Assembly (NCBI GenBank): GCA_965285935.1
Contig: OZ260661.1
Location: forward strand, 98,022,001 to 98,086,000
DNA from: Ophelia neglecta
Taxonomy: Eukaryota
DNA: 64,000 nt
Reading direction: 5' to 3'
Part shown: in pieces, positions 8,078 to 43,700 of the stretch
Layout of the letters: each line of letters opens with the position of its first letter
Numbering within the stretch: position 1 is the stretch's first letter
Program-made: the position numbers and the translations under genes
The notes under the pieces: generated by a model
Database searches by the model: none
Told to the model about the DNA's origin: nothing
The model's input: only the letters and a program-made list of their open reading frames with translations

Positions 8078-8460
8078 GACCAAATTTCTTCTGCCCTTGA
8101 TCGGGGCGACTGTACCATTCTGCTGACCATTATTGTATAAGAGGCCCGCCTGTGAATTGGTTTAAGAATTACTAACATAACTGTTCTCAGTTTGTCGAAA
8201 ATTACGGCGTATCCTCGGATAAATTAAAAATAATATGTTGGTCCCGCAGGGATCGATATTTGGTCCACTTTTTTGTTGTACATATAGAGTTTTGTATTCT
8301 TTAATTTCGCGGATGACTCCAATATGTGTGTATCTGGCAAGAGCCCTAATGATCTTGTTGAGATTACAACAACCTCTTTTACCCTCAATATTGCGTTGCG
8401 GTGGGGGGCAGGACATCTGATTGTTATTTGACTCAATTAGTTACTCTACTAAAACGAGCA
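8078..8460 (+). mobile_element. Decayed LINE (CR1/L2-like) reverse transcriptase fragment
   Basis: Pieces in shifting frames read DQISSALDRGD, NWFKNY..NCSQFV, VPQGSIFGPLF and FADDSN. Confidence 0.75.
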
Positions 8461-10658: not shown

Positions 10659-10764
10659 ATGCGTATAAAACTAAATCATTGTAGAAAGAAACTCATGAAA
10701 CTGTTCATAGAAATAACTGGAGGGAGTACGCCTCAGAGGAAGCAGAAACATGAACCAAGGACAG
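10659..10764 (+). CDS. PLCE1: PLCE exon 1 (candidate first coding exon, [19 protein letters not shown]...EPRT)
   Basis: ATG with A at -3; in-frame TAG at 10626-10628 (which could also be an acceptor, giving an exon from 10629); donor G|GTATTG in phase 1 matches the next exon. Confidence 0.5.
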
Positions 10765-19700: not shown

Positions 19701-22700
19701 TGTTTCGACAATTTTCCTTTCTTAGGATGCCGAGCTTTCCATTAGTCCTGTGGTGAATGCTGCTCACCAGATGTTAGGACACACCAAGTCTAACAGCAGC
19801 AGTCACCAAGGCCTTCCGAGCAGCAGGCCAGGGGACCACTCGCTCCTCCGGCCGACCACCTCTCTGCCCTACGCTCATTCCCAATCAGCTCACTCCGCCA
19901 ACACCTCAGCCGACCACTACGAGGATTTCTCCACGTGCTCATTCAGGGAATACTTCTTTCATGCTGTGCCTCTAATCATTCATCCCATTATCATACTGCG
20001 AGTACTGTGCCACAAAATGTTCGGACACATGTTGCGGAGAAAGACGGCCACCTCGCCTCACAACCTAAGTCCTCCTGCGGTGGTCGACACCGAGACTTGC
20101 CCTGTTCGGATCCCGGCGTTGTCCGAGGTGGAGAAGCCACCGCCGGGTCACACGGAGACTCCTTCGTCAGCCGGCAGTTTACGGAGGAAGCGTACAAATC
20201 TCCACGTGCAAATTGCCATGCCTGACCGGGACGAGGAGGAGGAGGAGCTGAGAATGAGGCGGAGGCGGACGAGGAGAGCCGGCTCCATGGACAAACACCT
20301 CCTTCGTCTTGGGCAAACAGTCAAAAAGAACACGATGGCCGGCGGAAATATTGCGATGAGTCTGGCCATCAAAGCTATCGGCGACAGCCTCATGCAGCCT
20401 TTGGATTTAAACATATCCCCTCCGGTACAGGACGACCCCGACTCTAATGACCCAAAGAAACGTAACCATTTCAGATTTCCCACCCTGCGAAAACGCTCCA
20501 AGTCGCAAGGATACATCGCAGGTATAGGAACTAACGACTCGCTCGAGAGCGAGTTGAGTTCTAGTCATAAAAGTTCCTCTCACAGCATAGGTAAACCTGA
20601 GGAATCTGAGCTCAAAGACTTCGAAAAGGAATTAATCAATTTACCGGTGTTCGAAGTCGATACACATCGCATGGATCAGTGTACCTCGCCACTGCTGAGT
20701 CGATCAAATTCCGTTCCAGAGCAACTGGAACACATGTTGGTAGGAGTGCTTTCTCAGCATAAAGGATTAGGCGTTACCACGCCGGCTGCAACCAACCACC
20801 ACAACCACAAAAAACACCATGACCATCGCCAGAACGAGGGCAATGCAGACGTTCACATTAGTGTGACGTCAGCATGTGAAATTTCAGTTACTGCCAGCAA
20901 AGAGTGTCCTTTTCCTAGTGGAAATAGTAGTGAAAATCAGCGTACCGACTTCGGATCTCATACAAACCATGGCTTCTCGGACCAGCATGGCTCCAAAGGT
21001 GCTAATCACGACCACACACCCCCCACCCCCTCGGAAGGTCTCCCAGAGAAGGGGGCTGTGGCTAGGACGGCCGCTCACCATCTTATTCCTCCTAGCAGCC
21101 CCCCTTCCTGGCACCGAGAAACTGGAAGTGGTGTCCAACATTCGGATAGCAGTGGTGTTTTTCACAATGAGACCATCGTGTTTCATTTTGCAGCTGCAAC
21201 ACCCTGTGAAAGCCCGTCTTCCTATACCGAACAGATCACCCCACCCCCGTTTAATGACGACAGTGCAGTCAGTATAAAAAGCATGCCCACTTCTGTGTCT
21301 GGTTATTCCCTTAACCGCAATCAGAAGCCCCCTCCGCTTACTCCTATCGCCCTGGAATGCTCCCAAGACGGCGTGGCCCAGCGGCCTGGGAGCCTGCTCA
21401 CCCCTTTAAGCAATACTACCCAAGGCCAGATGTCTGTGGGTTCCAGCCAGAGCAGCTTGATGCTTTCTCCCTACTCAGGCAGTCAGAACATATCTCTTCT
21501 GGTTCCTAGTCCAGGACTCGATCTCCCCATCCACCACATGGGCGTGATGAAAGTGGTCGAAACCTGGGTCAGTATCTGTTGTGTGGACTTAGAGTGCAGT
21601 GCCAACATGAAGAAAGAAATGAAGGATTTCTTATACAAAATGGCATCCCTGGGCTCGGAGTACCGACGCTGGAGCAAAGGAATCAGAGAGAAGCTCAAAC
21701 TAGAGGTTAGTCTTCTTGTTTATAGTCTCTATTTTCATGATTGTTCTTTTTCCATCCACGCTAATTATTTCAATTATCGCTCAGTTTATTTTCATCTTTA
21801 GATATCCGATCTCCTCATTCTTTTTTGCAAATCTTTGCATGACCAATTCTTTCATTGAGTCCGTATTGTTTGCTGAACGTAATCTGCTTCCAGCCAGCGC
21901 CCATGCTAGTTTGAAATTGAGTCATGACCTAGGAGATTTGGCCTGCAGGCTGGTAATTTAGGTTTGAATTAGATATCACAAACCACGTGCAATGAAGTGA
22001 AAGCCATAAAACATCTATCTTTAAGGCATGCCGGCGTGCACACCGACCTTCCTGTACTTTGTATAATAATGGATAGGGAGTCAGCTATTAATTATATTCA
22101 ACAGTTTATGAGCAGCACAGACAAGCTACTCCTGCCCTGGTCGGAAGGCCTACCTGCGAACGCGCTTGTCGGCCTCTTATGACCACCGTTTGCTATTGGT
22201 TCGCACGATGGCGAACCAACTTGCCTACTAAAAGTTTTTTTTTTATCAATTACCATCTAGTAGATCCGTTCCAGAAAGCACGTACGCGTTGTGGGGACTC
22301 ACTGTCGTGCCTTTCATCGCAGGCGTACGAGACTAGGATATTCTAGAAATGAGAATCATCATTCGTAACACCATATACGCAAACACTGTGATATATCTAA
22401 TGGAGGTTCTGTTCTATGTACACTTAACGTGGTGAACGTGCCATCGTAGCCGATTAGTTGTCTCATGAATGCGTGTCCTCTCCATTGTATAAATATATAC
22501 ATATTTATATACCTTCTTGCTTATAGAAAATGTGATAAATCGACCAAATAATAATAATTCCGGTATTTCTAAGTCCTAAAAAAGTCCTAGATTATTTTGA
22601 GCTGATTTTTTCAGTAAAAGGCATACCCTTTTCTACCAATACCAAGCCGTGTGCAGAGTCGTGTATCAATGTGCGCTTCGTGCATGAGGCAGGTGTCTTA

Positions 22701-25700
22701 ATGTCAGACGTAAGATGTCACATAAATGGGTCGATGTGAACTTGTTTGTGTAATGAGCAGCTGGGGCAGGCTCTCTATAGCTCTTTGTATAGCATGAAGT
22801 TTAACAGCAGTTATGAGGAATAAGAAATCTTCAAATCAAAAGAAACAAGTGTCTTTGAAAAGCCATTGTCGAAGGCTTATAGTAATATATTTAACAGAAT
22901 TGGGTAATGTTTCTGCTTAGATATGAAGTGTGTGTGTACTGCCAGTTTCAATAACAGCAGTCAATAACTTTTATTTTATAAATTACTGACAAAATTACTG
23001 GTAAATTGTAGTAGGCATGCTTAAATCAGCTGGACTTTATTACTTTACAATGACACCTGCTCGTCCACTGACTTTTCCATTTTCTAAGCATTATACCACG
23101 CTTATCTATTGGCTCTTAAAGCTTATTTGACAAAATGGCAGAAGATTAAAAATGGTCCGTTGTTGGCAAAGCCACATTTAAAACAATTACTTGGCCGGAT
23201 TACCATAAGCCGACGGAACGTTTCTATATTTAAATTTTTTTAAGGGTAAATTGAGGTAACTTGACTTTAATGCTTTTATCAAATGTATTGACCACTAATA
23301 GGAAGTCAAATGTAAACAATATTGATAATTATGGAGACATTATCTGTAATGGTTTTAGACACCCCAAAAAAATTAATGTTTGGCCGTGGTATCTAAGAAA
23401 TCTGATCGTGACCTTCAACTTGGCCTTACTTTTAGGTCAGCATGTGCAAACAAAAATATATCCAATGTTTTGTCACGTGGCTCAATTAGAAGGAGGAAAA
23501 AAACACGAAATGAAATGAGGAACCAAAGAAAGAAGCACAAGATGATACGAAACTTTGACGTGTGGATATATATGAAAAATGTCGGCCTAAAAAAACCAAC
23601 GTTTAATTGATAATTTGTCTATATTTACTATACATAGCATCTAACGGGCAATAGATTGATCGATCATGTCCTTGGTCATCTGGTTCCTATTCATTTAGCT
23701 AGTAAATGGGCAGGCTGTCACAAGAATTTTTAAGAGAGTGAAACTGTATTCCGGGATATGAAAACACACGGGTGTTTGCGGTGTATTGACTAGCCTGTGA
23801 CTAACCTGCTTGTGACAAGCCTGTGACTATCCGGTGCTCGTTAATCCGAGCACTCCCTCCCCAGCCCTATTATGTCGGCGAGGAGCTTAACCATTTAGTA
23901 TTAAATTACCTAGATTGGTCAGGAGGGTGGCTTAACGAAAGCTAATGAAATTCTGACAGATCGCCTTGATCACTTTTATGTAAGCTGTGTTGGAAACAAG
24001 CAGAGTTAAGGAGATGATTCCATATTGGATAGTTTGAGCCACTTGATCTACATTCAGCCGTGTTAATTGGCCACACTGTTTCCCCTTCGTGTTGTGTCCA
24101 GTACTATAGCTGGGTAGTGGGGGGTGGGGTACGAGGGGGGGGGGGCAATGTCATCTGGAACCAGTACATATACCCTCCGCCCGAAAGGGTATCTTTTTCA
24201 GATCTTACAGTCTATAAGGTAGACCCTCCCCCCCCCCCCCTTTTTGATGGGTTGCTACAAGCTGTTCCATAATTTGTAGGCTTGCTATATAAAAACAAAT
24301 AATGAAAGAAAAATCTGCACATGTAATTTCTCTCATTAAAACCTACGCCAGCGGAGCTAAGGGGGTAACAATTCAGCTAAAAATGTATCAATTTTCGGCC
24401 ACACTAGTAAACATAGGTTGTTTCCCTTTTAAGTGATGGGCAACTTCGAGTGGAATTGCTATAGGAATGCCCCCCCCCCCATTTGAGTTTCCGGATGCAG
24501 ATTTCTGTCCTTAAACCTGGTCAGTGCCCCCCCCCCCTCCCCCCCCCGTTCCCTGGGAGGGGGGCAAGAGTGGGTCTCGGGTGTTTTCCATACGCACATC
24601 GCGTTTTGTTCACTAGTTGTCCAACCTCCGATCGAAGAAGATAACGACCCACTCCCTTATGTATTCATAAAGGTAGACCCACACTGACCAGGTTCTTGGC
24701 TAAACAAAGTTCAAGGGTCAGCGTACTCACATTGTTGGCCTCCATGTTGACTCACTCTATGCATATTCATTAAGAGACCATGAAGTATGTTGTTTTAATG
24801 CAGATATTTCAACCTTTCAGTAGTTTTTAGTATAGCTCCATGTCACTGGATCTTTTAGATCATATCAAATAACAGTTCATTGGTCAACTATGTACTTCGT
24901 ATTCCAGACATGTGTATGAAGTTGGAACTTTTTTTTGTCTTCGGTGTGAATGCTGTTTGTTTTACGTATATTATTAATTAGTAGAATTATTTATGTAATT
25001 TTTTACTTTTTCCCTTCTAGGAATCCAACGTGTGCAGAACCAACTCCGAGGTGGCTAGTGACTTAGAGAACATTCACGTGCAATATCGACTGGTAAGAAA
25101 TTTTACCTCGTATATCACTAAAATAAATGATTACTCATAAGAGGCCTGCTTATGTAATTAAAACTGGCATAAAACGTATGTGACGAGTCCTACTAGGCGC
25201 GTTAACTGAATATTAAAGAACTACCAGGTTATTAGTAATAATAACTCTTATTTATCATCTCCATCACACTCACGACAGAACGCACGGCCTATAGCCGAAC
25301 ATAGAGGCAGCGTGCCAGTGGTACACGTTTATAATATATCATCTGTCTCCTGATCTCTGTAAGCCCTACGACTATAATACTTTAATGGAATGGTAAATGG
25401 GTTTTTATTTTGTTCAGTATCAGAGATATGCTGACATCGTTTGAGGTTAGACTGAGAGTGTCGTCCTGAATAAGGCATATTCTGTTTGAACTTCTAATGT
25501 CTTTTTGTACTCCTAAAGCTGTTTATGGCGTTGAAAGTATTTATTGATTTTTCACATAAACACATATAGTATATATAAACAGATATTCTTTGTAAGCCTA
25601 TGTATGTTTATATATAGAGAGAATATTGTATAAGTTCATGTTGTGCATATTTAAATTGCGCCCACACAGTAGCGTAATGTTCTGCACAGAAAGTAGACCT

Positions 25701-28700
25701 TGAACCGTTGGAATTATTCCGCGCTCCGTGTACGTGAAGCTCCCCCTGTAGGCCTAATTATTTTCTCGTTTGACTCCAGCCAGTAAGAAGGCTTAGCCGT
25801 ATTGCACGCACGTTGTGATTAAGGCTTCTTGCTCGCCGAAATCATTAGACGCACGACACGACACAGTGCACTTTGTATTACAAATGGCATATTTGTACAT
25901 TATTCATTCATAACAATGAAATTCTGCGATTTAAGTCAATAACTATTTGCGTATGAAAACAATGCATACGATGACCACTATCATTGTTTAATAAACCTGT
26001 TTTAGCGTGTCGCCTCTTCATATCAGTCATTATGTAGGGGATATAGGGCGTGAATTATTTTGTTCATAATTATTGAGATATCTATTAGGTACATGCAGCA
26101 TCAAACTATTACTATATATTGTCGCGTCAAGGGAATGATACATGCAGCCTGGCGCTGTCGTGTAGGGATATCGGGCATGAAATACTGGCGCTCCTTTTCG
26201 CTTTCGGAGCATTATGTGGATTACTTGGCTATTCATTACATCGAATAATGCTACGTTACCAATACTTACCATTACGTGGAGTAGAAACACATCTGATAAT
26301 ATTATATTATTAATGGCAGCAACTATTGCGAATGGCAGTTAATGAATTAACATGGTGTCACAACTATCACAATAAAACGATATTAGATCTCACATATTTT
26401 TCGCAGCTGTGATCATCCTGTTATAGGGACACTAGTTGGTATAATATTCAACAGGTGAGGAAGGCTGCTATGTTATAACAGCGGATATGAGCACCAGCTT
26501 ATTGACTGTATTTAGACTTACATCCCTGGATTGTATAAAAAGTACCTTACATCCGAATATGTGAAATATAACGTTATATTAAACTTCCAATAATAAACAC
26601 CGGCTATAAGGGTTTGAAGGGGGGGGGGGTGTTAGATATATGACTATAAGCCTATCATTAACTTGACCTGGGATGTACTTCAAATGCATTATAATGTATC
26701 CATGGATACAGTATCATGATACAGATCATGTTACTGAAACGTTTAAACCGCGTCTTGATTCAAAATATGATATAGATGCCTCTTCTTCGATACACATTTC
26801 GGCCTATAACTGAATCACTCCTCCAAACGAACGCTGTTTATCGTCTGCCTATTATGAAATAAATGTTTTTAATAGAGCAATCGAGCATTAATATATTGCC
26901 TCAAGACCAATATTTTCCAAAGTCACCATAAAACACATTTAGACGGTGCCCTAATTGATGTGTGACAGAATACTAGTTAACATCAATACAATTTAACGGT
27001 ATAGTAAAAAGACGCAAAATTGTTCAGCCGCATTATTATTCTTTGGTCGTCTTTTTCCTGTGACCGCAACGTGGCGCTGCAAGTCGGGATTAACATAGCT
27101 GCGTTGAAAGTTCCGGGTTACGTGGACAGATATAATGGACTGGTCGATTTATTTTTATCTGCAGGGTATTAACTACTGTTTTTGTTTCAAATGGTGTGCC
27201 TCGTTACCGGATTCGTCGCTGGCCAATCATCTACTCTGCAGCTGCTAAACCGGCAACCAAACTTGTATGTGCGCAGTGCAGAATACATTTAGCGCGAACG
27301 ACACAGTTTGCCCATTTCAGAAACTAAATAATACTCGAGGAACCTACGGACATAAATTAGCGACCTACAGTGTACTCTTAGATCTTATGACAGAAATTGC
27401 ACCAATTACCCCTAACCTGCTCATCATGTAGGTATTTGACAATCAGGCAAATCTAAAGTAATTCGTTGATGCGCCTATACTCATAATACACAACAGTAGT
27501 TCAGGCTAAAGTTATTTTTTGATTTCAATAACGTTTCAGGCTATAGGTTGTACGCTAATAACATTCGTTATGGTGTCCTACAAGTACGTAAGTTGCGTAT
27601 CACTGAACTCGCCAGACGAGACTGGTCTTATTGTGGACGCCTCTTTACACGTTCGGCACTACTTTAGCCGCTGTAACGTGTCGAATTGGCCGTATCATCG
27701 GGATGCCGAAGGGATTTTAGCAGAAAACGACCCCTAACTGGTCAATCAAAGAGAACCTGGTAACCTACTCACACCAAAGGCGTGCAATAATACAATTGTA
27801 AATAGCTGGAAAACGTAAGAAGTCCCCACAAATGACATAAACTGAATAAACTAACAAGATACCACCGTAGGGCGAGGTCTAGGGCCGAGAAGTGTAAACA
27901 CTTGCCCAGCTTAATCTGCGCACACGTTTAAGGCAGGTGCGCCGCTTTCAAAAGGGGAACTTCTGGTAGTTTAAACAAATATCAGACGCGGAATATAATT
28001 GAATCTGGTTTAAAGCTTGACAGGTGTGTATCGTGCGATGGGACGAATTGAGACCTGTTTACGGTGGATAACGAAACCACCTGCTTTAAGGGACTTGCCC
28101 GAACGATAGACATAATCAAGCAGGAAGGCTAAAAGACACTGATACTTTATTAGTGGAAGTTGTATTCGGTAGCAGACTTCATCAGGCAGCAGAAGGTTAA
28201 TCTTGCCCACGTACCAGTACATAACTTTCAGACAACGTTACAAACCTGGCACAGTCATTGTTGTTTTCAGGCTAATAGTCAGACCAGCCTGCAACTGTTA
28301 CATGTAAACTACACGAGCAGATGTAATAATCTGACTGTTGGAGGATTTGTCGGTGATAACCGCCACTCACAAAGAAGGATATTACTTTTATTGCTAGTTT
28401 AGCGATAAGCGCAGACGACAGGTATAACAGGACAGTTTGTAGCGGCGTCACAGGCTCGAGGGTCGGCCGGTCAGATATTATGTTTACCCGCCTCCTCACA
28501 GTGTTTGATAGTCACACTAAATCCTCTTCGGCCGTCTGCTCCGGGCAGTAGAATGCGAGATATAATCACTCGTAGTGTACGTGAGGTGTTATCAGACGGA
28601 TAATGTGAGATGTTAATTGAAAAGGGTTTGGCTGTTTGGTCTACCACAGGCCGCATTAACCGAAACCTGTCATAAGAAGATGGCTCACCTCCATTGTTCC

Positions 28701-31700
28701 TTCAATTGCGAGCACTGACTTCAGGCTATTAACTTGTCCACGTCACAGAACGGAACCTAGTGCTCCGTGGGCCGAATATTTTTTGAAGGGAACATGGCAG
28801 TATCATATCTTTCAGGATAAAAATACGTAGTGGCTTGTTCTGAAATCTAGTTTGTTGTCGGCTCCGTGGAATGCTAATTTGTGTAGTTATATCGAAGTAT
28901 AGATAGATGAAACCAACCAAGAAACCCTAGCTGGAACAGTTTCACCAAGACCCAAGATCTGCTTGGTCTTATTCGCGCAGCGGAAAAGGAAATACGTAAT
29001 AGGCTTTCTGAACGTTTTTTGTGCGTGATCAATTTTATTAGACTTGGACGCGATTCATAGTCGATGCATTGCTTGTGCACGGCTGGCTTATGATTGTAGA
29101 AGTTCAACAGAAGACAGAAATGCGTTCCTGTACATGCTGTGCCACCTTATCTATCAGGATAATTCAGAAATGCCTTCTATTTGACAGAATATGTAAAAAC
29201 TTGGTTATTGACGATTGAGAAAGGAATGATTTTTACATGCATCGAGTATTTCATTCATGAAAGTTGCCACACTATGAAAAAACTTGACATATTCCACAGT
29301 TTTTTTTTATTTGTGAGGCTTAAATCTGAAGAAACATGTAACGATCAGCACTGGTAGCCCCTTCATCATCCGTCCACAGTCTCAGAAGTCCAGGGATAGT
29401 TGACAATGGCAGAGAAATTACAAACAAATGAGCTGAGTGGGAGCGGGTCAAAAGGCTCCTCGGCAGACGACTGCACGGCGTCCACAGCACTATCAGAGAG
29501 CACAGCTAGGGCAGACGAGCAGGTTAAGATTGATTTGCATTAATCTGGGGTTGTAGGAATATAAAAGCAAGAAATCCGCGCGGTTACACAAGCAATGAGC
29601 AGGTGATAAGAACAAGACTGTCGCTATGATGACCTCTTGTTCGCAGGCATTCATCTTCTTTGAAGTAGAGCCTGTGTCAGCGCTTTGTGCAGACAGTTGA
29701 ATGTCATTCATACTATTAAGGCTCCATGTTTATTTGGTGCACGCACACGGTAACCAGATTAGCAGTGTTTGAGATATGGAGCTATGTATGAAATACAAGA
29801 AGTAAACTTACTCGGATATCAATATGCTGGATTAGGCCACTTAGAACGTTTTAACAATTCATTCCTTCAAGATATATCTCTTCCACTACAGATAATATCT
29901 TGATCCCTAAAAATATAAGTTTCCCTTTCCCTCAAATAAATGTCTCTTACCTTCCAGAGAACTTTCTACTGTGGCTTGATTAGGCCACTGAGAATGTTTT
30001 TATGTCGTTCCCTCGATGTAGTTTCTCGTTCCCTGAAAATAGCTATCTCGTTCCTTCGTTTCCTCAAGATAATATCTCGTTTCTTCAAGATAACCGTATC
30101 GTTCCCTCAACACAAATATATTGTTCCCTCAAGATTACTGTCTCGTTCCCTCGCGGTAATAAGTATCTTGAGGAAAGGAGAACTTGACTCGAGCTAGGGA
30201 ACGATATTTTATCTTGATGGGCCAAGATAGCTATCTTTAAAGAACAAGATAATCATGATGTACGAACGAAAGGTTTATCTAGGGTGACCAGCTTGTTCCC
30301 TCGGGATAAATTTTTCTCTCCCTCAATATATAACTTTCTCTTTCCATAAACATAATATTTCGCTCCCTCAGGGTAACTCTCTCTGTCGCTCTAGATAATA
30401 TCTATCTGATTCTCATTAGATAATTATCTCGTTTTTGGCGTTATAAAAACGATCTCAGATGCTTAGTCCAGCCAGTATCGTGCGGTGTATGGTGGGTCTA
30501 GTACGTTTCCAGATAAAAAAGTTTTCTTCCATATTTATTTTCTATGTTTTTACACAATACAATGCCATACACTTGCATGACATACTAACCTTACCATTGG
30601 CCTGTAACATGCATTTAAATATCACATTGTCATCTCGGAGCAATGATTAGGATGGATACGTATGGGAGGAGTATGACGTTTTGGTGGTGTTTCGTTCATT
30701 GTAGGCCTGTAGCTAATGCAAATCTTACTCCAAGCATAAACATTGACGGCAATAATCTTCAGGGAATGATCTTTAATAATGTTCAATTAGCCACCTGATT
30801 ACGTCCCTTGCTTCCATATAAATCGCTCTAGGACATCTAGCCGCTGCACAGATTTACGTGTAGCTTCTACAATGATATCACCGATATAAAGGCTGTGCAA
30901 AGATTATTCAATTACACTATATTGTCCAATAGCGATACAAATATGTGTATATACGGAAAGTATAATTGTCAATTTAGACCTATTAATTCCAAATATTTTT
31001 AGTGGGATTGTACACGGAAAGGTTGACTAATTAGCAAATATTGATTTCGATCGAATATGCAGTAAAGAACTATCCGTAATTAACGAAAGAATGTAAGGTG
31101 GAATACGTGGAATGAAAGACGCGTTTAATAGCTTTTTCCAATCGTCTGTACCAACAAAGGCCAATGACCGAATACTTAATTGAGCTAATACTGTAAAGGA
31201 GCTCATGTTCGCGTCCAAGTAATCTCGCGCGTGCGCAGCCATGATTTCGATAAAACGCTAATAAATTTCATGCGTACTTAAAAAAAAGTCCAGTTAAAAG
31301 TGGCTAACGCGAATTAATGTAGGACCACGATATTAAATCGACGCGAGTGCGGATTTGTCAAAAGTCTGCTTACTGAATTTACGCGAACATTATCTCCACA
31401 AAATGATCTAAAAAAACACATAATTGTCTGTCTACATATTCAGGACTTTATTTCTCGACCCAGGCTACTAGATAATGTCCAACACTGCCAATGAGAAATC
31501 GGATCATGATATAATTCATATATCACTACCCTGGATGTCTATCTTATTCGGGGCGAAATTGACTGTAAACAGAAAATAAAGCCTGACACATCGGATAGAA
31601 TACGGTTTTTTTAGGATGATTTTGGAACTAAAGCCCTTTTATGAAATTATATCACGCAACAGAAGAGAATTTATAATAGAAAATTATACCGAAAGGACTG

Positions 31701-34700
31701 AGGGATATAGGTATTCGTTTAGAAAATAATCAAACAAATGTTTAAGTTGCGACTTACTACGTTCTGCTCCTTCCTCCATATCAAATACCGTGGTAATAGC
31801 ATGCCATATTATACAATTCACATTGTTAAGGCGTCGTGTTATATATAGCTAAGGGGGCAGAAATGTTGAAGCCAATTTGTGTTCCTTTTGGGTAAAAATT
31901 GGTGGAGATATAACATTTTATATTTAAACGTAGCTTGCAAGGCAATGCTGAGGTCATCAAATCAAGTTTGTCGGATGTCAGTCGTCGCGTCCGTCTACCC
32001 ACAATTCCTACTTTCGAAAAAAAAACATTTGTCGTACAACTTTAGCCTTACAAGTAAATGCATTAATAATGTTCTTCATTCGCATGTACATATAAAGGAT
32101 CAATGTCAGGTAACTTGTGTCGTAAACCAGTCACCGGTACATACATAATTAAAAAATCGTCTTCCCAAATCCGCTTGTATAAACCAATTGATTTTTGCAT
32201 CGGACTAAAAGTTGCAAGATAGACATGTTAAGTGTATTGACCACTGATAGGAAGTCAGATTTAAGGAATCAACTGGTGGGCGTCAAATTTCGCCCTTGAC
32301 CTCCTTTCTCAAGGTCATATTAAGAAAATCATGTCTTACGTTCACTAAACACGGCAAGATGGGCACGTAAAACGCCGTATGTTTTACATTTCCAGTCGAT
32401 TAAGAAGTGGCAATTTAAATATTTATCCGCTAATGAATAATAAAATTGGGAAAACAGTATGTGTTTAACAAACTTAAACACAATGTACTCAATTTGGCTG
32501 AAGAAAACTAATTAGAAATCTTTCATAATATTCTCAGTCTATATTAGAGAACAAAAAATGTAAAAAAAAACTCACATGGGAAGAAAAAAGTAGGGACTAA
32601 AAAGACTGGAAACAAATTTCATTTTTTCAGACAAATATCACATTTGCATGGACTCGTGAACTCCTATAATTGTTTGTTTAACGCGAAAGCAGGCGAATGT
32701 TTTTTAAATTATATTGGTGTTCAGGTAATTGTTTATTTATTATTGGTTTTGTCTGGCTTTCTTTTCCCATAGAAACTGCACTGGCCACCTTTCGATCTCA
32801 ACCGCTTTAATATTAAACATTGGCTGAATACAGGGCTACCTATCTTGAACAAACAAGTCCCCACTGCCAAGACAGCCTTAGTTATAGGAGAGGAATATGT
32901 GTATACAGTACAGCGAAAATAGTTGGTCTCAACTAGAGATAGTCGAACTCACACATAAAACATCCACTGATACAAGTCACATATGTTTTAGTCCATGCCT
33001 AGCGTGTAAGTGTGGGTCAGCGGATGAATACATAACGCACCCGCCCGGTCAAATTTAATAATCAGTTCTCGTCTGCTACACGTTTTATATATTACCAATT
33101 TTCTCGGTGTAGGCCTACTAGTTGTAACAACAACAGTAACGTTCACAAAAAATTTATTAAGAAAGCAATTATTTCCTAAAACCATGCTTAGTATAATATT
33201 TTTTTATTCCTAATCTTCTTTCATCCTTCTAGTTACAACGTGTTGTGGTTAGCGGTCGTCTGCCCGTATCCAAGGAGGAGGCGTCAACCTTGGCAGGTAT
33301 TCAGCTCCATCTGGAGGAGGCATGGCCGGAGGAGTTCCCAGACAATGGGCAGGAACCAGATGGCCAGGAACAGGACCAGCTCTTAAGGGTAACTACATGT
33401 ATTTACCACAAAACAAGGTTAAACTGGCTTTATGATAGATATAGACATGCCTAACTTACTAACCCCCAGCCAGACCCAGATAGACAAGTGATCCCTTCGG
33501 TCTTGTTAATGTTATTGAACGGTTTTGTTTTGAAGTATTTATAAGTGGGACTAGGTATGGAACATACCCGAATCTTATTTTGGTAATACGATAAACTATG
33601 TAGATAAAGAACGAATAACAATGACATATTAGATTACTAAACAATATTATGCGCAAACTCTATAAAATAGAATTCTATAGCGGCTGATCATATTCTTAAA
33701 GCACATGTTGTCTTCTTATTAAATACGTTGGCGATTGTATAGTATCATAACGATAACAGAACACACCTTATGTAAGATTAATAACCTACTGATTATTAAA
33801 TACCTTTTATCTGCAATGCACTATCAGCAAGAGATTTCACCAGTAGGAGTCAATTAAATAAAACGTACAATCATTGAATTATGTTGACACATCTCGGCTA
33901 AATAAGGTTTTCTTCGATCTTTCATCCCCGCGAAAGTTCTAGAATCATAGGGTACACCATGCAGTCAAAGTAGTCGTCTGCACTTTACAATCACGACATG
34001 TCGCTTCATGCCGACTGGTACTAAAACAGTGCAGATCGGGTCTCCCGTTGTGTCTTTGGCCTATTTTCTTTCTTCCCCGAAGAACTAATCATTGCCCTCC
34101 CATTATTTTACTCTCTTGAATGAATTATGTGCTCACGGGCCTCCTATAATGAAAGATACGGGATAACGTACAGTCTATGGATTTTAACTACCAATGTGAG
34201 AACGTGCATCGGTAAATGGAGGAATGGTAACTACAGTGAAACCTGTGAATTGGGACCACCCAATGAACTGATAAAAAAAAAACTTGTCTGATTATAGCGG
34301 TTGTCTGTTAAAACAGGTTATTTCATATTGAAATTATACATTGCGGCCTTCATATTTGTGGTCGTAATTGCTTGGTGGTCTTAATATAGAGGTGGTCTTT
34401 AAGGCTGGTTTCATTGTATACCAATAGGATGTCTTATGTCTTTGACCATACCTTGTCAGTAGGACTGGCAAAATGCTTGTGCCAGGAATGGGTCGTTTAT
34501 TTATTGAAATACACCCAAATAATTGCCATCTTTATAAATGGTAAAAAGCAGACATCACCTCTAATTTATATGCATACCTGGGATAATCTAATTCACTTTG
34601 CCCTAAGTGCCAATTTTCATTGTGGAACATTTATCAACACGTAATTTAATGCCAAGTGATTATTATTGTTTCCTTCTGGTGTGAAAATTATACACTATAT

Positions 34701-37700
34701 AAAGAATGGCCAAACAGCAAAGCCGTCAGGGAATGGTTTATAAAGAAAAACTGAATAAAAACCAATCAATATAAGATGCATACGAATTGTTTACTTGTGT
34801 AAAATCGTTTGAATTTGCCCTTGCTTTAAATCTTGCATAGCTAACCTTCAGGCAGAGGCAGAGATTGATTGGTCATAATGATGATAAAAAAAAGGTCGCA
34901 CAAGGGAAATGTTGGCCATGGATATAATTATGACAATATTTCGTACCAGACGCTCATTAAATCGTTGTCAAGATCCATCTTCCTTGTGCAGTTTAATGAA
35001 CCGAGATTTAGTACGAGAGAATTGATCTTGTTTAGTGCGTTCGGGCGTTCTGCGTGGGCATCAAGCGAGGTGGCAGGGTGTACATCGTGTATTTCTCTCC
35101 ATCTGTACCTTACCACTGAGGTGAATATACGACAGAGAACGGTGATTTTCTGTGGCCTACGGCTAGTATAGCCTGCCCAGTATTGATTCGCTAACTAATT
35201 AATGATGATCAAGTCTGCTCTGGCCCAGATTTGTGATGCCTATCTATATATAAGGATTGCACACATCTCGCCAGCCTACACTTCTTATAATGTGTACAGT
35301 CATTCTACCAGACGGAAATTTTTTGGAAAATTACTGACCATGCAGACGACATTTTGCCCACCTCACAGACATTTCTAGCCCGTGATACCACGCACTTGAT
35401 ACCTCAGTAGTCTTACTAATTCGTGTCCATCAGACCATTCTCTTCGTGTTGACATTCCCATGCTAAAAGCATGCACATTGAGTATTTCCAAAACCGGATA
35501 TCTTTTTTTTCTGGTATTTGTCGTTTCATTTCCTAATTCTCGTTCAAATACAAGTAATCTATGCAAAGAAAGTCGTGGGCACTCTGTGTTTTTAACAGTT
35601 TACCGTTACATGCAAGCTGGTCTTGTTCCGGCAAAATTGCCTCTATTGAGATCTGAATATCTGAATAGAAGCAAAAAGTTGTCTATGCTCCATGCAAGTG
35701 GACCTGTATACGTCCACAGACACCGACAAAGTCATTCGACTGTATAAAAATACATGTACTGGGGCGGGTAACCTTGGAGTAGATTCGGAAACAGAGAATC
35801 TGTACTATACAATACTTATCGGTGTGTTGGAAATAGCCGTATTTTAGTTAAAGGTAGTAAGATGACATTTAATGTTGTTGTCCAGATCCGTAGTGTTTGA
35901 GCCTATCACGTCTTAGTGTCTTATTTTTAGATTGAAGACGCTAATTGCAATGACAGCAAAGGGAAAAAGTCCATTTTAAGAAACTTAAACCGGCCTAAGC
36001 GGTTCGCCAGTAACCGACGAACTGGTCGTCTGACCAAAGGACTGCTGTGCATTGACGAGGAGGAGGGGACGCGGCTGTGCTTTCGGGTACCAGACGGCAG
36101 GATGGCCCAGGCTCTACCACCCGAGTACAGGACATCAAGACAAGTCCGACAACTCATCGAGGTAAGGACAGGTTATCTCCCCGTATTAATAACCTGGGAA
36201 AAATGTAATGTTCTAGAACATTCGCGTGACGAGGTTACTAAGTTCAGCCTATGGAAAACGAATTTGTAGGCATATAGAATTTTTTTAATGTCATTCACCT
36301 GCACTCCACTGGTAGTGTACCATGGTTTGTGTGTATTACACAGAACACAGGTACCTTTACAATAGCCGGTAGCTTGGTGTATTTACGACCTATTGACCCT
36401 TCGGTTAGTCAAATACGCTAGCCCCATGAACTTCAGTTTTATATCATATTGTAAATGTCATCTTCATACAGGAAAAACAAACCAAACTATGGCATACGAC
36501 ATACTACGACAATGAACTGAAGCTGAAGCAACTCTACATTAAGATATGCAAAAATCTGCCGGCATATGGATGTAAACTGTACCAGGTGAAAGAATTACGC
36601 AGAGGCAATACCCAGAGAAAGGTGAGCTATTTTACTCTATTATTATGGCTTTCATTATATATGATGAAGATGTGTATGTTCAGCTCAAACGTTCTTAAAT
36701 CTTAGCATTAATTCTCCAGTTTTTGCAGTATGTTTATGCATGAAAAATATCGCTATCGGGTAATGAAGGGAGCCATGCATTACTGGTGTTAATGCAAGAG
36801 GGCCGACAAGTGTACATTGACAGTGTACATTGGCATCTATTAACCCCGGCATCTATAGGTACCCAAAGAAGTACACATGTGTATTTTATGGTGTAATGGG
36901 CGAAAAATATATACGCGGTTTTACCAGTGAACGTTGTATTATTATTAAAACATAAATTGTCGTTCATTACATAGTCTTATAAGAATATGCCGAATTATAC
37001 AAATACAGGTATGGAATAAAAGTCAGGCCCATAGTTACTGAACGGCAAAAAATAGATTCATAATAGATTGAAATAAAAAACAATATTAGTACAATGGAAT
37101 AACAATAATGGTAAACCAAATAATATTACATTAAGAAGAATGACAAATTAATAAAGGATAGAACTAATAGAATGACAAATTAATAAAGGATAGAACTAAT
37201 GATGCTGTTAAACAGTTGTTCTAGCCAATACATTGTGAACATTTTAATGCCTAGCAATTAATGTGATTTTACAATAATATATTATAACTGTAATCAAATA
37301 ACAAATATAAGTAATATATAATAAATAAGGTTAAATATGGTAATTAACTTGGTTATAATAGTTACTTAATATTAAACAAGGCCTGGTGAGAAAGAAGAAT
37401 AAAAACACGAATAAATTAGTCTCAGTAAATTGAATAAATAAAGGTTATATGGTATAAATAGCTTTTTCAACATTACTCACTTTACAAAGGCCGCTGACTG
37501 TGATTGTTTAACGCATTCTAAACAGATATAACCGACACTGAGATAACCATAGGAACAAGGTCAACAACTAATTTAGGTGGATTCTTAAGTCACCCAAGAG
37601 AGTATTTGTAAACCACTGATTTAAACAGAGAAATAGACTATTGAAAACCCATATTAGCATGATATGTTATTAACACTGATGACCCCTTGGTATCTAACCG

Positions 37701-40700
37701 TTTTGCATAAATTGTACGTTGGTATTTTTGTATGCAAGGCATGCTAGCATTTCTTGTAGGTAAACGAGGTTATCAGAGTTCATAGAAACTATAGACTAGT
37801 GTTATTATACATGCGATTTATCTCAGCAATGATGCGAATGGCTTGTTTTTGTAATATTTCCAAAGGCTCCGGTTGAATATCAAAAGTACCCCAAACCTCG
37901 TCAAAACGAGATAGATAAGGGTAAAAAGAGGCTGAGGTGAAGTTTGTGTCTCGATCCAGGTGAAATTGTCTTCATAACTCAAGTTCGATGAAGGATTTTT
38001 TAAAGGTTATTGCTGTTCAAAGAGGATAATGGTCTGACATTTCTGGCAGTGCTCACAAATCACGTTTAAAGTGTAAACTGGATCAGTCTCCAGTGTGGAC
38101 AGTGGTCACCAGTTGCACGAGACCCCCCGTTACAGGGCTGAACGACTTCTCGTATGTGTTTCCTACAAGGTTGTAAAATTTCCAACAGCTAACCTAGCCT
38201 TGGCTATATGACCTGTGCCACCAGGCACATTTGGTAGTGTCCACCACTAAGTCTACCAGAGAAGATAAACTATTTTGTGTTATTAATGTTTGCTAATTTG
38301 GCAAATTATTAACAGTAGTTAATAGCCAAACACGTGACGAAAGATCTAAACATAAGATAGGGTGTAATTTCCCAAATTTACGATTAATGTGATAGGATTC
38401 GACATGTCGTTTAAAGATTGCTAGGGAATAATTAAAATAAAGAAGTCGCTCAGAAGAGACCTGGATAAAAACTAATATCCTAATATCTGACAAATCAGTA
38501 AACAAGGGTTGATATGACATATGGTATTTTAATATAGCTTGCATGACTCGTAAAGTGATTGGAACAGATTATTTAATTAAGGTTAAACCTAGTTTATACT
38601 AAGATGACTGAAGGTCGTAATGGTTCTTATACACATGTATAGCTTAATTTAGTTAATCCATATACAGTAGCTGTCTAGAGGACTGATTATAAGGTATAGA
38701 AAAAGAGTGCCCATCGAATTCTCCAGTCGCTTAGCCTCAGCCACAGTTCACTGCTCTCTTATCTACACAGGTCAACGGAGGTAGATCAAGCTAGCATCCA
38801 TACCCCAAAGAACCATACAGTTATAGACATTATAAGAAAAAAGAAATGTGATATAACTGGTTCGGCCTATTTTACCTAAGATTAGGGGTTCTCTGTGTTT
38901 AATGTATAAAAATCTAACAAGATTGAATATTAATTATACCATTGTCTCATCAAGGTATCTCGGCTTTTGTGCATTGGAAGTGAGAAGATCGCGCTGCTGG
39001 ACTGTAAGACGAAGCTGACAATTAACTCGCACCCTATTAAGGATCTTCAAGAATGGAGCACGGGCGTCGGTAAGGCCCATGACGGGCTCTCTCTCGAGTT
39101 CCGCGGCTCTCGAGCCTGGACGCTGCTGGCTCCGTCCATCGAGAACCTCAAGTCTGTTACCGCTTCCCTCTGGGAAGTAATGGGTGGTGACAGTCGCCGC
39201 TTTGACAGTCTTCCCCTGCAGAGAAATGTCCTGAACTTCGGTAAGAGGTTGCTAAGCTTCAACTAGCTTTAGTTAGCTCAGTCAAGTGGTGTTTAGCTAG
39301 AGAGATTTATCGCGGTACGGTGCCTAAAATAACATCTTAGCCCATTATCTATTGGTAGAAAACAATTCCCAGTGATGAATCATGCCATCGCAAGCTCAGC
39401 GCCTGCCACAAATTGTCATTATTTTAGTCATGCTTAGCGGATCACGCATAGTGTGTAGTCATATAGGCTTACATGACGTTAACTGATCATGTATTTTTTG
39501 TATCAGATTACGGCCGAAGGCAGGTTTCAATGGGAAGTGATATGGAGAAATGTATTGTCTACTCTCAAGAGCTTCGCGAGTTGCAGAAGATCCTCCATTT
39601 TCCCGAGGAGCTTGCCCTGCGGATGGCCGAGACAGAATACAGTTTATTTAACCAGGTGCCCCCGATGATGTATATCAGACACGTCACCACCGATCTGACC
39701 AAAACACCGGACAGTAAGCCCGACTACCCAAGAGAAAAGAGAACTCCCTCCATGCAAGATCTCATACAGCGTTTTTCCGAAGTTAGTTCGTGGATAACAC
39801 ATATCATTGTAACCCAGCCCACCCACGAAGACCGGAAGGCCGCGTTGTCCTGTATACTAAGACTACTGGAAACCTGCTGGAACACGGGAAACTTCAATGG
39901 CGCCGTGGAGATACTGGCCGGACTCAAGTAGGCACACTTTATCCTAGTAGTAGTACACTTTACTCAATTCGTAAAGGGAATCATTATTACTATACCGCAT
40001 AGCTAGAATGTGGTTCGTCTAGATTTTCTCAGCAATAAAGCAGGCAATAACGAAAAAATCATGAATAAGTATTGTGAAAAAATGGTATACCTTCCAGCTT
40101 TAGGTCTTTGTAGTGTGTACTGTATTGTCATTTTATGGCAGAATTTATAATTAGGGTGGTAATAAGAACTGCATTATTTTCAACAAATGACTCGCTTTAG
40201 TGGTTCCGATCATTGACACAATGCAAATAAAGATAGATAGAGTATCTCCCAAACCAATAAACGCTGGGATGATAAATGTGTAACGGTCTACTCAAAACGG
40301 ACAGTCGCTAACTAAACAAATGTATGCTTTAGGTCTGAAAAGCTCAAACCATTCTGGCTGTCCATATCTGATGAGGACTTGACCATACTGAACACCTTGT
40401 CCGACTACCTGCTGTCGCCGGAACCTACCAAGGAGTACAAAGACGCCGTGACGCGCGCTATGGACATACCCGGATGTAAAGTCATACCGTTCTTCGGCGG
40501 CTTCCTCCACGACCTTAGGATGGTCTTCAGCGGTATACCTAGTATGGTAGTCATTCCTAACGAGTTCGGTCAAAGTATTGAGGTAATGTATAGGTCTCGT
40601 GAGATGTAATTACATTATTGTCATGACAGACTCATTTTGACAGACAGGTCCGAATGGTCTTTCAGAATGACGTATATAGAGTAGGCCTATTTTTCCAGAA

Positions 40701-43700
40701 GAACAGCTTCTGTGAACCCATGGATAACGCACGTAAAACTAATAGCCTAAACGATACCATTGCCTTGATATCTTGGTTGCCCTGGTTTCGTGTTTGCCTT
40801 GGTATCTTGTTTGCCTAAGTATCTTGTTTGCCTTGATATCTTGTTTGCCTTGGTATAATTTTTGCCTTGGTTTCTTGTTTGGGCTTATCCAAGCGCTTGC
40901 CATTTCTTTCTATCTAAAAGGTAATGTTAACTCACTTGCTAGTTTTTTTACGCAACATCATATAATGTTTCATTGCTCCAGGCCAGTACGTAATTTGATT
41001 TCTGTTGAGTAGGGCATTCCGCCCTGGGTGACACGGTATTGCTTTAATGTGACATATACCGTGTTTCAGTTCCTGTCTGATTACAACGGGGAGGACCGCT
41101 TCATGACCCGGATAGGCGTTGGTGGACTTATTAACATGGAGAAGATACACCAGGCACATCTCGTGCTCAACGACATTCATTTGTTTCATCAGCACGCTGA
41201 CATTAACTCCCGCGCAGAAAAGATTGAAATTGAAACGTCGTCTGCCAATGATGAAAATCTCGGGAGGTAATTTACTCTCTGCCGTGCTTGCCTTTCTACT
41301 CTGTTTTGATTGAAGTGTGCCATAAATGGTGGAATTAGGAAATGCAGTCTAAATGAAGAACCGAATTACATCTTAGTAGCCAATTACATGGGCCACTACT
41401 CTTTTCATGATACTCAAAGCTATTTCTTTTTATTTCTAGGGGTCTTCAAGAGGATAGTTCCTTTGAGAACCTTGCGTGTGATTACGATCTAGACGTTAGT
41501 TACTACAAGCCTATCAAACCTTTTAACAGCAACCTACAAATCATGATGGTTTCCCCTAAATGTGCCGGGGTGAGCCAGAGTGATCTTCAACTGATGCACA
41601 ATGGTACCACCGTTGTGCGGTGGGACTCGAGCTCCGCCCATTCGAGCGTGTGTTACCTCTGTCTGGAGAGCGACAACAGGACTTTGTCTTGGAGTAAACC
41701 CAGCTGGAGCTGCCTGAGGAGTCAGGGCACCGTCGCCCCTCCCACGGACTACGTCTTCAGGGCGCCTGACACGTCGCCTTCCTCCCTGGCTCTCATGGCC
41801 CGCTACCAGAGTGGCCCACCCGTCGTCGAGGACGTCGAAGACGGCTACCTTGACCTCTTTGTTGTCAAGCGCGTTTCTAAGGGTGAATCAAGCGCTGAGC
41901 TACACCTTATTTCCAAACGTCACAATTTTGATGGCGTCTCAAAAGAGGATAACTGTCTTTCTTTGATGTTCGGTACATGTCTTGCGGATAATAAATACAT
42001 TGAATTTGTGATGCCGTCCAATGTGTGTGAAGTTTGGTCACGTGGATTAAAAAAGCTAGTGTGGGCGGCTATGGTTCATAACAAAAAGATGACTGACAAG
42101 AGGATTAACTGGCTGAAGGAGCAGTACTTACAACTGTTTGTGCAAAATGAGAGATGTATTGGGCCTACCCCTGCAGAAGCAATACAGGCTAGTCTTGCAA
42201 TACTCAATACTTCATTAAGATGTTTAGAGAGAGCACTTGTCAAGTGTCACACGAGTAAATATAGGGGGGTAAATATACCGGGCATAATTTTGTTCTTGTT
42301 AGGTTGATGTCTGATTTATCTGCCTCCATGCAATTCGGCCTTAATGGTGTGTTGTGCAAAGATGCTTTATTTATATATTCTCTGTTTTATAGGTGTTTGG
42401 TGGTCGACGATGGAATGCTGATACGGTAGGGCCAAATTCTACCGGAGAGCCCCAGAAGGGATTTCAGAGAACAGCCAGTGTTGTCGGTGATAAGCGGAGT
42501 AACAAACAAAGAAAAGGAATCTACACACTTCCGGTCTCACTCGGAAAGGTGAGACGTTCGTTTGGTTAATCCTCCTGAATTACACCTATAAGGAATGAAG
42601 CGGACCACTACATCTCAAGAATCATTGATTTTTTCCTTAATTGGGAATTAGTTTTTTGAATTCTGACTTGATTTGTTGTTCATGTTGTACTGTTATTTTA
42701 TTTTATCCCAGGAGCCGTCTTCTCGACCCTCTGTCATGGCACTGCAAGAGCGATTCCAACAAGATGCTATGAAAAATGACACTAAAAACAAGGCAGACAA
42801 TTCTATCCGGGAGAAAGGAAAATCTAAAGTCACCAATAAGAGTCACACGGAAGCCTGTTTATATGGTACGGCGACGTCTGGCAGCAAGATGGATTTAACG
42901 GTTATAAAAGGCGGGAAGCAGCATGCCCCTGTATCGGTGTACGATCCCAAAGCACTCACCTTCAATTTTGGTAAATCTGGCTACCATCCAAGGGACCCAG
43001 TCAGACTAAGCCTAGGAGCAAAGCACTGTGACCCCAATAAGCCAATAACTCACTCTACTAACATGGACTTTACCGACTTTGTAGATCTCTTCAAATGTTT
43101 CAGTCTAAGGATAAGAAAGGATCTGAGAGACCTCTTTGAGCAATTTGCCACAAGCCAGCCAAGTATTGAGCAAAAAATGCCCACGGAAATTCTTTCCAGG
43201 AAGTACTCCCGAAAGGTTTCAGGTGAGGCACTCCTCTCTTTCTTAACACTGCTCTTGTAATCTTGTTGTTTTTCCTGCCCGACCGGAAGTGATAGCCTGT
43301 GGTAACTAGGTACTCCAGGGCAATTAAATCTCCTAGGTGTCTGCATGAAGGCGACACATCCTATAACTAGATTTGCCTCGGATTACTTCTATCCTATTAT
43401 ATTCTGTAAACTCGTTATTCTGAATGAATATGCTTATTTGCAGGCTTGATAACAAGGAATGCAAACCTTGATATGTCTGCTGACAGCAACAGAAGAAAAC
43501 TATGTGACGCGCTGGCCGTAGCCAGCATCGTGTCCAACAGTGCAGGCCTATACAGTGGAAAACAGAAGTGTCTGGGCATACAAGAACTACGGGAGTTCTT
43601 AGAAGATTATCAAGAAGAAAGCTTTTCTGAACAACAAATTATGGAAATAATCCATGTATGCATAGTTATCTTGACCTTTCGGTATTTTTCAACTGTTAGC

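What the first reader, a model, noticed from the sequence alone, without database searches (positions are those of the whole stretch)
25021..39240. Talin-head-like FERM F2-F3 module fused into PLC epsilon, directly upstream of the CDC25 GEF
Seen: five exons splice in frame to give [38 protein letters not shown]...ALPPEY...[68 protein letters not shown]. Knowledge: this tracks the talin F2-F3 junction as I recall it (YVKLARSLKTYGVSFFLVKEKMKGKNKLVPRLLGITKECVMRVDEKTKEVIQEW), and vertebrate PLCE1 has no FERM domain. Inference: one chain would combine a PIP2/receptor-tail (NPxY-type) binding FERM lobe, a Rap GEF, a PIP2 hydrolase and Ras/Rap-binding RA domains, i.e. a possible adhesion- or cortex-anchored signalling hub. 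I cannot tell whether this architecture is already described in invertebrates.
Basis: partly seen in the sequence, partly recalled or inferred. Interest (0 to 1): 0.85.

Follow-up and report, generated by a model that had tools for sequence, protein, structure and literature searches.

The report
Talin-type FERM F2-F3 in invertebrate PLC-epsilon
Five exons of this animal's phospholipase C-epsilon gene do encode a talin-like FERM F2-F3 module just before the Rap-GEF domain, but the same layout occurs in most invertebrate PLC-epsilon genes and was already reported for the long C. elegans isoform, so it is a correct but ordinary finding.

Summary
Five + strand exons (25021-25092, 33233-33388, 35931-36161, 36472-36621, 38955-39240) have canonical AG/GT sites. 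They join in frame, and a split codon links the last one to the first CDC25/RasGEF exon at 39507.

The fold call holds too. Pfam FERM_M passes its threshold in full-length orthologues. A family profile hits only talin strongly in the PDB (E 8e-11; kindlin 3e-3). AlphaFold models of the window's own last exon and of a natural orthologue give talin F2-F3/F3 as top Foldseek matches. There is no F1 lobe.

Vertebrate PLCE1 shows no trace of the module. It is present in PLC-epsilon of hemichordates, echinoderms, molluscs, a nemertean, chelicerates, a myriapod, hemipterans and nematodes.

It is not new. Pfam and UniRef already label these proteins FERM/B41. Tomioka et al. 2022 (PMC8752840) reported a FERM domain specific to the long C. 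elegans isoform PLC-1(L).

Function is inferred, not shown: most likely membrane or tail docking of the GEF-lipase. No RNA data exist for this organism. The spliced peptide was not joined; exons were searched one by one.

The parts
21466..21705 (+). End of the large upstream exon: a conserved helical block that directly precedes the module. Another first-stage note calls it REM; that was not confirmed here.
   Evidence: tblastn to orthologues E 1e-12 to 1e-14. The donor is KLKLE|gttagt at 21705/21706. Pfam finds no RasGEF_N and there is no PDB hit.
25021..25092 (+). Exon A, 24 aa: linker plus the start of F2 helix 1 (..ENIHVQYRL).
   Evidence: AG at 25019-20 and GT at 25093-94. It matches the orthologue motif IH.QYKK just before LQQL.
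33233..33388 (+). Exon B, 52 aa: F2 helices 1-2 (LP.SKEEA..LAGIQL), then the start of an acidic variable insert.
   Evidence: Splice sites and translation. Pfam FERM_M positions 20-46, E 0.021. tblastn shows 72-82% identity to mollusc orthologues.
35931..36161 (+). Exon C, 77 aa: variable, basic, probably disordered F2 insert, then a return to F2 (ALPPEY...QLIE).
   Evidence: Acceptor tag at 35928-30 and donor GT at 36162-63. tblastn E 1e-4 to 1e-6. The equivalent stretch in the P0033 model has pLDDT below 50.
36472..36621 (+). Exon D, 50 aa: last F2 helices, the F2/F3 junction ([14 protein letters not shown]), and F3 strands 1-2 with the basic loop.
   Evidence: Splice sites and translation. 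Pfam FERM_M positions 91-112, E 0.009. tblastn 69-81% identity, E about 1e-22.
38955..39240 (+). Exon E, 95 codons plus 1 base: the rest of F3 (PH/PTB-like sandwich plus C-terminal helix) and a linker.
   Evidence: Pfam IRS-type PTB E 0.0015. The AF2 model has mean pLDDT 81, and its top 27 Foldseek PDB hits are all talin F3.
39507..39927 (+). Exon F: first CDC25/RasGEF exon, joined to exon E through a split Asp codon. The 3' end is approximate.
   Evidence: Acceptor tatcag at 39506. Pfam RasGEF E 8.6e-14. Orthologue HSPs abut those of exon E without loss of residues.
40328..41210 (+). Two further CDC25 exons (about 40328-40582 and 41064-41210), given as context.
   Evidence: tblastn E 1e-17 to 1e-28 to the RasGEF region of orthologues.

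Best explanation
The five exons encode a genuine but F1-less FERM module. It has an F2 helical lobe, carrying a roughly 80-100 aa disordered insert, followed by an F3 PH/PTB lobe. Its closest relatives by sequence and by fold are the talin F2-F3 lobes.

The module is part of the long form of this animal's PLC-epsilon gene. It sits between a conserved helical block and the CDC25 Rap-GEF domain, upstream of the PH, EF, X, Y, C2 and RA-RA parts. The layout is ancestral in bilaterian PLC-epsilon and is missing from vertebrate PLCE1.

How it works is inferred, not shown. It most likely docks the enzyme on acidic, PI(4,5)P2-rich membrane through the conserved basic beta1-beta2 loop of F3, as talin F3 does. 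It may also bind a short cytoplasmic tail in the F3 groove. Either way the GEF would sit next to membrane-bound Rap, and the lipase next to its substrate. This agrees with the requirement for the FERM-bearing long isoform PLC-1(L) in C. elegans.
For: Splicing and frame.

Same chain as CDC25 and PLC: orthologues are collinear across 10997-54857, and exons E and F share a split codon.

F2: FERM_M scores above the gathering cut-off (23.8 bits) in several orthologues. P0079 scores 47.2, P0004 38.3, P0032 31.3, P0063 30.7 and P0043 29.8 bits. Window exons B and D give collinear sub-threshold hits at profile positions 20-46 and 91-112.

F3 and talin affinity: a profile of the module against PDB sequences gives 24 talin sequences at E 8e-11 to 3e-5. 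Kindlin-2 follows at 3e-3, myosin VIIa at 5e-3 and KRIT1 at 0.1. The AF2 model of the orthologue fragment P0033 has F3 pLDDT above 90. Its top 23 listed Foldseek rows are talin head or F2-F3 structures at E 2e-9. VIA-align gives Z 13-14 to ERM, merlin and talin F2+F3. The AF2 model of window exon E has pLDDT 81, and its top 27 hits are talin F3.

Conserved basic loop and Trp: seen in 45 orthologues.

Distribution.

Vertebrate absence.

Published precedent and genetics: PMC8752840.
Against: No RNA data exist for this organism, so the splice junctions rest on consensus sites and orthology.

Window exons taken singly are below Pfam thresholds.

The F2 lobe in the model is only of medium confidence (pLDDT 50-79).

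Talin R358, which is needed for integrin binding (own knowledge), is Glu/Gln here. No lipid or peptide binding was tested.

Beetle and moth PLC-epsilon models lack the module, so it is dispensable in some lineages or isoforms.
Confidence: 0.85

Rival explanations
1. The module acts mainly inside the molecule, as a regulatory or autoinhibitory insert beside the CDC25 domain, rather than as a membrane anchor. Talin F3 clamps its own rod, and Epac has a domain inserted between REM and CDC25; both comparisons are from own knowledge.
For: It sits directly N-terminal to CDC25 with a short linker. Talin F3 is used for autoinhibition in 6r9t and 2kgx, both among the fold matches. The tail-binding residue equivalent to talin R358 is not conserved.
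Against: No interface could be assessed, because the tools give no PAE and no complex was run. The conserved basic loop is what a membrane binder would keep.
Confidence: 0.25
2. It is a full three-lobed FERM domain whose F1 lobe was missed.
For: UniRef names nematode fragments 'B41' or 'Band 4.1 domain-containing', and the SMART B41 model spans F1-F2. The paper speaks simply of 'the FERM domain'.
Against: F2 helix 1 starts in exon A. The preceding conserved block is helical and ends only 24 aa upstream. No FERM_N, FERM_f0 or FERM_C hit appears in any orthologue. Orthologue residues leave no room for a roughly 85 aa lobe.
Confidence: 0.07
3. The FERM-like exons belong to a separate upstream gene and are not spliced to the CDC25 exons.
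For: There is no transcript evidence for this species. Reading through the exon E donor meets a stop after 8 codons.
Against: More than 45 orthologous proteins from many phyla carry the module and RasGEF/PLC in one chain. The E/F intron is 266 nt with a shared split codon. Exon order is collinear with orthologues.
Confidence: 0.03
4. It is only a generic PH/PTB domain preceded by unrelated helices, and the resemblance to FERM is convergent.
For: By VIA-align, isolated PH and PTB domains score as high (Z about 13) as FERM domains. The F2 model confidence is moderate.
Against: FERM_M is above threshold in orthologues. The profile alignment to talin runs across the F2/F3 junction at E 8e-11. Foldseek alignments cover 267-310 columns of talin F2-F3.
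Confidence: 0.03

Closest known systems
C. elegans PLC-1(L), the long isoform of PLC-epsilon (Tomioka et al. 2022, Commun Biol, PMC8752840)
   Same: [quoted passage not shown] Nematode orthologue fragments (P0029, P0033, P0044, P0088) align with the window's exons B, D and E. The authors also propose membrane/PIP2 targeting.
   Different: The paper gives no lobe-level analysis: it mentions neither the missing F1 nor the talin affinity. It points to an Akt RXRXXT site in the FERM domain, and I saw no such motif when reading the window's exon translations by eye. The window comes from a different phylum, being about 47-51% identical to mollusc and chelicerate orthologues.
Talin head F2-F3 (for example 3g9w, 1mk7, 6u4k)
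   Same: It is the best sequence and fold match. The shared features are the F2/F3 junction motif, the basic beta1-beta2 loop of F3 (talin K316-K324), the RLLGI strand and the Trp equivalent to W359 (talin numbering from own knowledge).
   Different: Identity is only about 15-20%. There are no F0/F1 lobes, so the talin Rap1-binding lobes are absent. A large insert sits in F2 rather than F1. R358 is replaced by Glu/Gln. The module is embedded in an enzyme rather than fused to a rod.
Vertebrate PLCE1 (PLC-epsilon 1a)
   Same: It is the orthologous gene from CDC25 to RA2.
   Different: It has no detectable F2-F3. PF00373 is absent from every vertebrate entry listed. The family HMM gives nothing significant against them: one 2298-aa rodent entry (P0198, Marmota) at E 3.2, no hit for the rest, with --max. 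hhalign against coelacanth PLCE1 gives probability 0.1%. The 2026 review says the mammalian N-terminus has no recognised homology (PMC13022664).
Kindlin, myosin VII/X MyTH4-FERM and KRIT1 FERM domains
   Same: They share the F2-F3 fold and score as weaker sequence relatives (E 3e-3 to 0.1).
   Different: They are much weaker matches than talin, and all have an F1 lobe. KRIT1 binds Rap1 through its F1-F2 surface, which cannot exist here.

Membership tests
FERM domain (three-lobed cloverleaf) | F2 lobe matching FERM_M (PF00373) | tested here: met
   Orthologues score above the 23.8-bit cut-off: P0079 47.2, P0004 38.3, P0032 31.3, P0063 30.7 and P0043 29.8 bits. Window exons B and D hit profile positions 20-46 and 91-112.
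FERM domain (three-lobed cloverleaf) | F3 PH/PTB-like lobe directly after F2 | tested here: met
   The AF2 model of window exon E has pLDDT 81, with six strands and a C-terminal helix. Foldseek top hits are talin F3. F3 in the P0033 model has pLDDT above 90.
FERM domain (three-lobed cloverleaf) | F1 ubiquitin-like lobe N-terminal to F2 | tested here: not met
   No FERM_N or FERM_f0 hit in any orthologue. Only 24 aa (exon A) lie between the upstream helical block and F2.
Talin-type F2-F3 | Closer to talin than to any other FERM family, by sequence and by fold | tested here: met
   Talin scores E 8e-11 against 3e-3 for the next family. The top Foldseek hits of both models are talin.
Talin-type F2-F3 | Basic beta1-beta2 loop of F3 used for acidic lipid binding (talin K316-K324) | tested here: met
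   The window reads [14 protein letters not shown] frequency is 0.5-0.9 at the matching columns in 45 orthologues. Actual lipid binding was not tested.
Talin-type F2-F3 | Integrin NPxY-binding pair R358/W359 | tested here: inconclusive
   The Trp is conserved (0.9), but the preceding residue is Glu in the window and Gln/Glu in orthologues.
Talin-type F2-F3 | Binding of PI(4,5)P2 or beta-integrin tails | not testable with these tools
   This needs liposome and peptide binding assays.
PLC-epsilon (long invertebrate form) | One chain with CDC25, EF-hand-like, X, Y, C2 and two RA domains | tested here: met
   tblastn of PLC-epsilon orthologues is collinear across 10997-54857. Exon F hits RasGEF at E 8.6e-14.
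PLC-epsilon (long invertebrate form) | The transcript joins the FERM exons to the CDC25 exons in this species | not testable with these tools
   No RNA run holds this locus; the three holders look like genomic DNA.

The most novel reading that the evidence does not exclude
The PLC-epsilon F2-F3 is a talin-derived module that still binds receptor tails (integrin-type NPxY or similar) together with PI(4,5)P2. Ancestral bilaterian PLC-epsilon would then have been recruited directly to adhesion or receptor sites, where it makes Rap-GTP and consumes PIP2. That would be a built-in talin-like targeting device, which vertebrates (and perhaps holometabolous insects) later discarded.
Probability: 0.15. 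Interest if true: 0.6.

Novelty: new member of a known kind. Interest (0 to 1): 0.3.

Why it matters
The work on mammalian PLC-epsilon read here treats the N-terminus as a region without recognisable homology (PMC13022664). The invertebrate long form shows that the ancestral enzyme carried a talin-type F2-F3 lobe pair next to its Rap-GEF, and that vertebrates lost it. This gives a testable idea for how the long isoform is targeted, for example in C. elegans PLC-1(L), which is needed for taste-avoidance learning. It also offers an evolutionary frame for the unexplained vertebrate N-terminus. For this window itself the result is routine annotation: one more orthologue with a layout that databases already label.

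Tried and rejected
1. Transcript evidence. The look-up of sequencing runs found only three runs of one study, holding 83-95% of words including introns. That means genomic DNA with no RNA.

2. Exons were used one by one by reference, and natural orthologues stood in for the whole module.

3. The search for homologous proteins with the Saccoglossus FERM region alone found only hemichordates, because of the word-index limit. It was replaced by a CDC25-region search and a profile search.

4. REM identity of the upstream block. Pfam and a PDB sequence search gave nothing, so the block is left as 'helical, unconfirmed REM'.

5. P0021, P0051 and P0054 from the representative search are spurious multi-stretch hits, not relatives.

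6. No F2-F3-complete orthologue closer than the nematodes was within the 1200 aa folding limit (P0004 is 1209 aa), so the full-module model is of a nematode fragment.

7. An Akt RXRXXT motif like the one noted in C. elegans was looked for by eye in the exon translations and not seen.

Full report
**What is in the sequence**

On the + strand, five open segments flanked by canonical AG...GT sites join in phase 0:
- A, 25021-25092 (24 aa)
- B, 33233-33388 (52 aa)
- C, 35931-36161 (77 aa)
- D, 36472-36621 (50 aa)
- E, 38955-39240 (95 codons plus one base)

The spare G of exon E and the AT at 39507-39508 form an Asp codon. The frame then continues into an exon that Pfam calls RasGEF (E 8.6e-14).

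Each exon was used by reference, and natural orthologues were used for the complete module.

**Are the exons real, and in one gene?**

A search of 1.84 billion representative proteins with exon E gave 65 hits. The long ones are PLC-epsilon orthologues from a spider, a tick, Saccoglossus, gastropods and nematodes.

tblastn of these and further orthologues on the window is collinear from 10997 to 54857. It runs from the N-terminal region through the module, CDC25, EF, X, Y and C2 to both RA domains. Residue numbers abut at the D/E and E/F junctions. Exons B, D and E score E 1e-9 to 1e-25, and the variable exon C scores 1e-4 to 1e-6.

Exon A is too short for BLAST. It carries the conserved motif (I/V)H.QY(K/R) immediately before LQ..VV.G, as in mollusc, scorpion and hemipteran orthologues.

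No RNA run exists for this organism. The only holders are three runs of one study that contain the introns too. The junctions therefore rest on splice consensus, phase and orthology.

**What fold is it?**

Exon by exon, Pfam gives collinear but sub-threshold hits:
- Exon B matches FERM_M positions 20-46 (E 0.021).
- Exon D matches FERM_M positions 91-112 (E 0.009).
- Exon E matches the IRS-type PTB model (E 0.0015). From memory, this is the Pfam model that talin F3 itself matches.

In full-length orthologues FERM_M passes its gathering score of 23.8 bits. P0079 scores 47.2, P0004 38.3, P0032 31.3, P0063 30.7 and P0043 29.8 bits, always just N-terminal to RasGEF.

A profile built from the module (alignment A3) was searched against all PDB sequences. 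It hits 24 distinct talin sequences at E 8e-11 to 3e-5. Kindlin-2 follows at 3e-3, myosin VIIa at 5e-3 and KRIT1 at 0.1. The alignment crosses the F2/F3 junction.

AlphaFold2 on a natural nematode fragment that contains the whole module (P0033, 407 aa, 40-row alignment) gave the following:
- F3 is a seven-strand sandwich plus helix at pLDDT above 90.
- F2 is helical at pLDDT 50-79.
- There is a disordered insert.

The top 23 listed Foldseek PDB matches for this model are talin head or F2-F3 structures (E 2e-9, 267-310 aligned columns). Myosin VII/X, kindlin and KRIT1 follow. VIA-align gives Z 13-14 to ezrin, moesin, merlin, radixin and talin over F2+F3, and about the same Z to single PH/PTB domains over F3 alone.

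The window's own exon E, folded alone with 35 homologues, reaches mean pLDDT 81. Its first 27 Foldseek matches are all talin F3, at about 20% identity.

**No F1 lobe**

F2 helix 1 begins in exon A. The preceding exon ends at 21705 with a conserved helical block, and only exon A's 24 residues separate the two. No orthologue has a FERM_N, FERM_f0 or FERM_C hit.

Another first-stage note (s1-748395) calls the upstream block a REM domain. Pfam and a PDB sequence search did not confirm that, so I leave it open.

F2 carries a variable insert of about 80-100 aa, made up of the end of exon B and most of exon C. It is acidic and then basic, and it is low-confidence in the model.

**Distribution**

Precomputed Pfam lists for PLC-epsilon orthologues, plus my own 260-state HMM of the module, were used for the survey. 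The module is present (E 1e-21 to 1e-105) in:
- hemichordates;
- echinoderms (Patiria, Acanthaster, Asterias, Diadema);
- molluscs (Haliotis, Gigantopelta, Biomphalaria, Bradybaena, Ylistrum, Mizuhopecten, Mya);
- a nemertean (Lineus);
- chelicerates;
- a myriapod;
- hemipteran insects;
- nematodes.

Every vertebrate PLCE1 listed (fish, coelacanth, amphibians, reptiles, birds, mammals) lacks PF00373. None gives a significant HMM hit even with filters off: one 2298-aa rodent entry (P0198, Marmota) scores E 3.2 and the rest give no hit. hhalign against coelacanth PLCE1 gives probability 0.1%.

Beetle and moth models of about 1,900 aa also lack it. This may be loss, or annotation of a short isoform only.

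The 2026 JBC review of mammalian PLC-epsilon states that the N-terminus has no recognised homology (PMC13022664).

**Already known?**

Yes. UniRef names nematode pieces 'B41', 'FERM' or 'Band 4.1 domain-containing protein'. Pfam FERM_M is recorded for dozens of RefSeq PLC-epsilon models.

Tomioka et al. [quoted passage not shown] They propose PIP2 and membrane targeting, and they show that a deletion specific to PLC-1(L) impairs taste-avoidance learning (PMC8752840).

Four further literature searches found no other paper that links PLC-epsilon with a FERM domain of its own. In those searches I found no published statement of three points:
- the lobe-level description (F1-less, specifically talin-type);
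- the position next to CDC25;
- the loss in vertebrates.

**How it most likely works (inferred)**

The beta1-beta2 loop of F3 reads [12 protein letters not shown] in the window. This corresponds to talin K316-K324 (numbering from my own knowledge). The loop stays basic in 45 orthologues, and the RLL strand and the Trp equivalent to W359 are nearly invariant. That is what a membrane-docking talin-like F3 would keep.

The residue equivalent to talin R358 is Glu/Gln, so integrin-type tail binding is uncertain.

My best reading is as follows. The module docks the long isoform on acidic, PI(4,5)P2-rich membrane, perhaps with a tail ligand. This places the Rap-GEF and the lipase at their membrane substrates. 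A regulatory, intramolecular role next to CDC25 is the main rival.

**Verdict**

However, this is an ordinary orthologue of an architecture that is already annotated and published. Interest is 0.3.

Noticed in passing
window 25093-33232 (intron between exons A and B): Many RefSeq PLC-epsilon models start just before F2, for example Saccoglossus at 2175 aa beside a 3249 aa form, and also P0097, P0108, P0109, P0113 and P0114. This hints at an internal promoter giving a 'FERM-first' isoform. This 8.1 kb intron could hold such a first exon.
   Followed up: no
window 33330-33388 and 35931-36095: F2 carries a variable, probably disordered insert of about 80-100 aa, acidic and then strongly basic (..[16 protein letters not shown]..). 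It recalls the basic loop inserts of talin and kindlin F1, but sits in a different lobe.
   Followed up: partly
window 1-10996: Long orthologues begin with ankyrin repeats (Pfam Ank in P0032, P0079, P0090 and others). No match to them was found in the window upstream of 10997, so those exons probably lie 5' of the window.
   Followed up: partly
window 21466-21705: The conserved helical block just upstream of the module is called REM by another first-stage note. It gets no RasGEF_N hit in Pfam and no PDB sequence hit.
   Followed up: partly
orthologues P0210-P0235 (beetles, moths): All listed holometabolous insect PLC-epsilon models (about 1850-1960 aa) lack the F2-F3 module, while hemipteran long forms have it. 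This is either a second loss or annotation of the short isoform only.
   Followed up: partly
window 39920-39931: The first CDC25 exon appears to end at a GTAGGC donor (39928-29) that overlaps an in-frame TAG. The exon end is therefore given as approximate.
   Followed up: no
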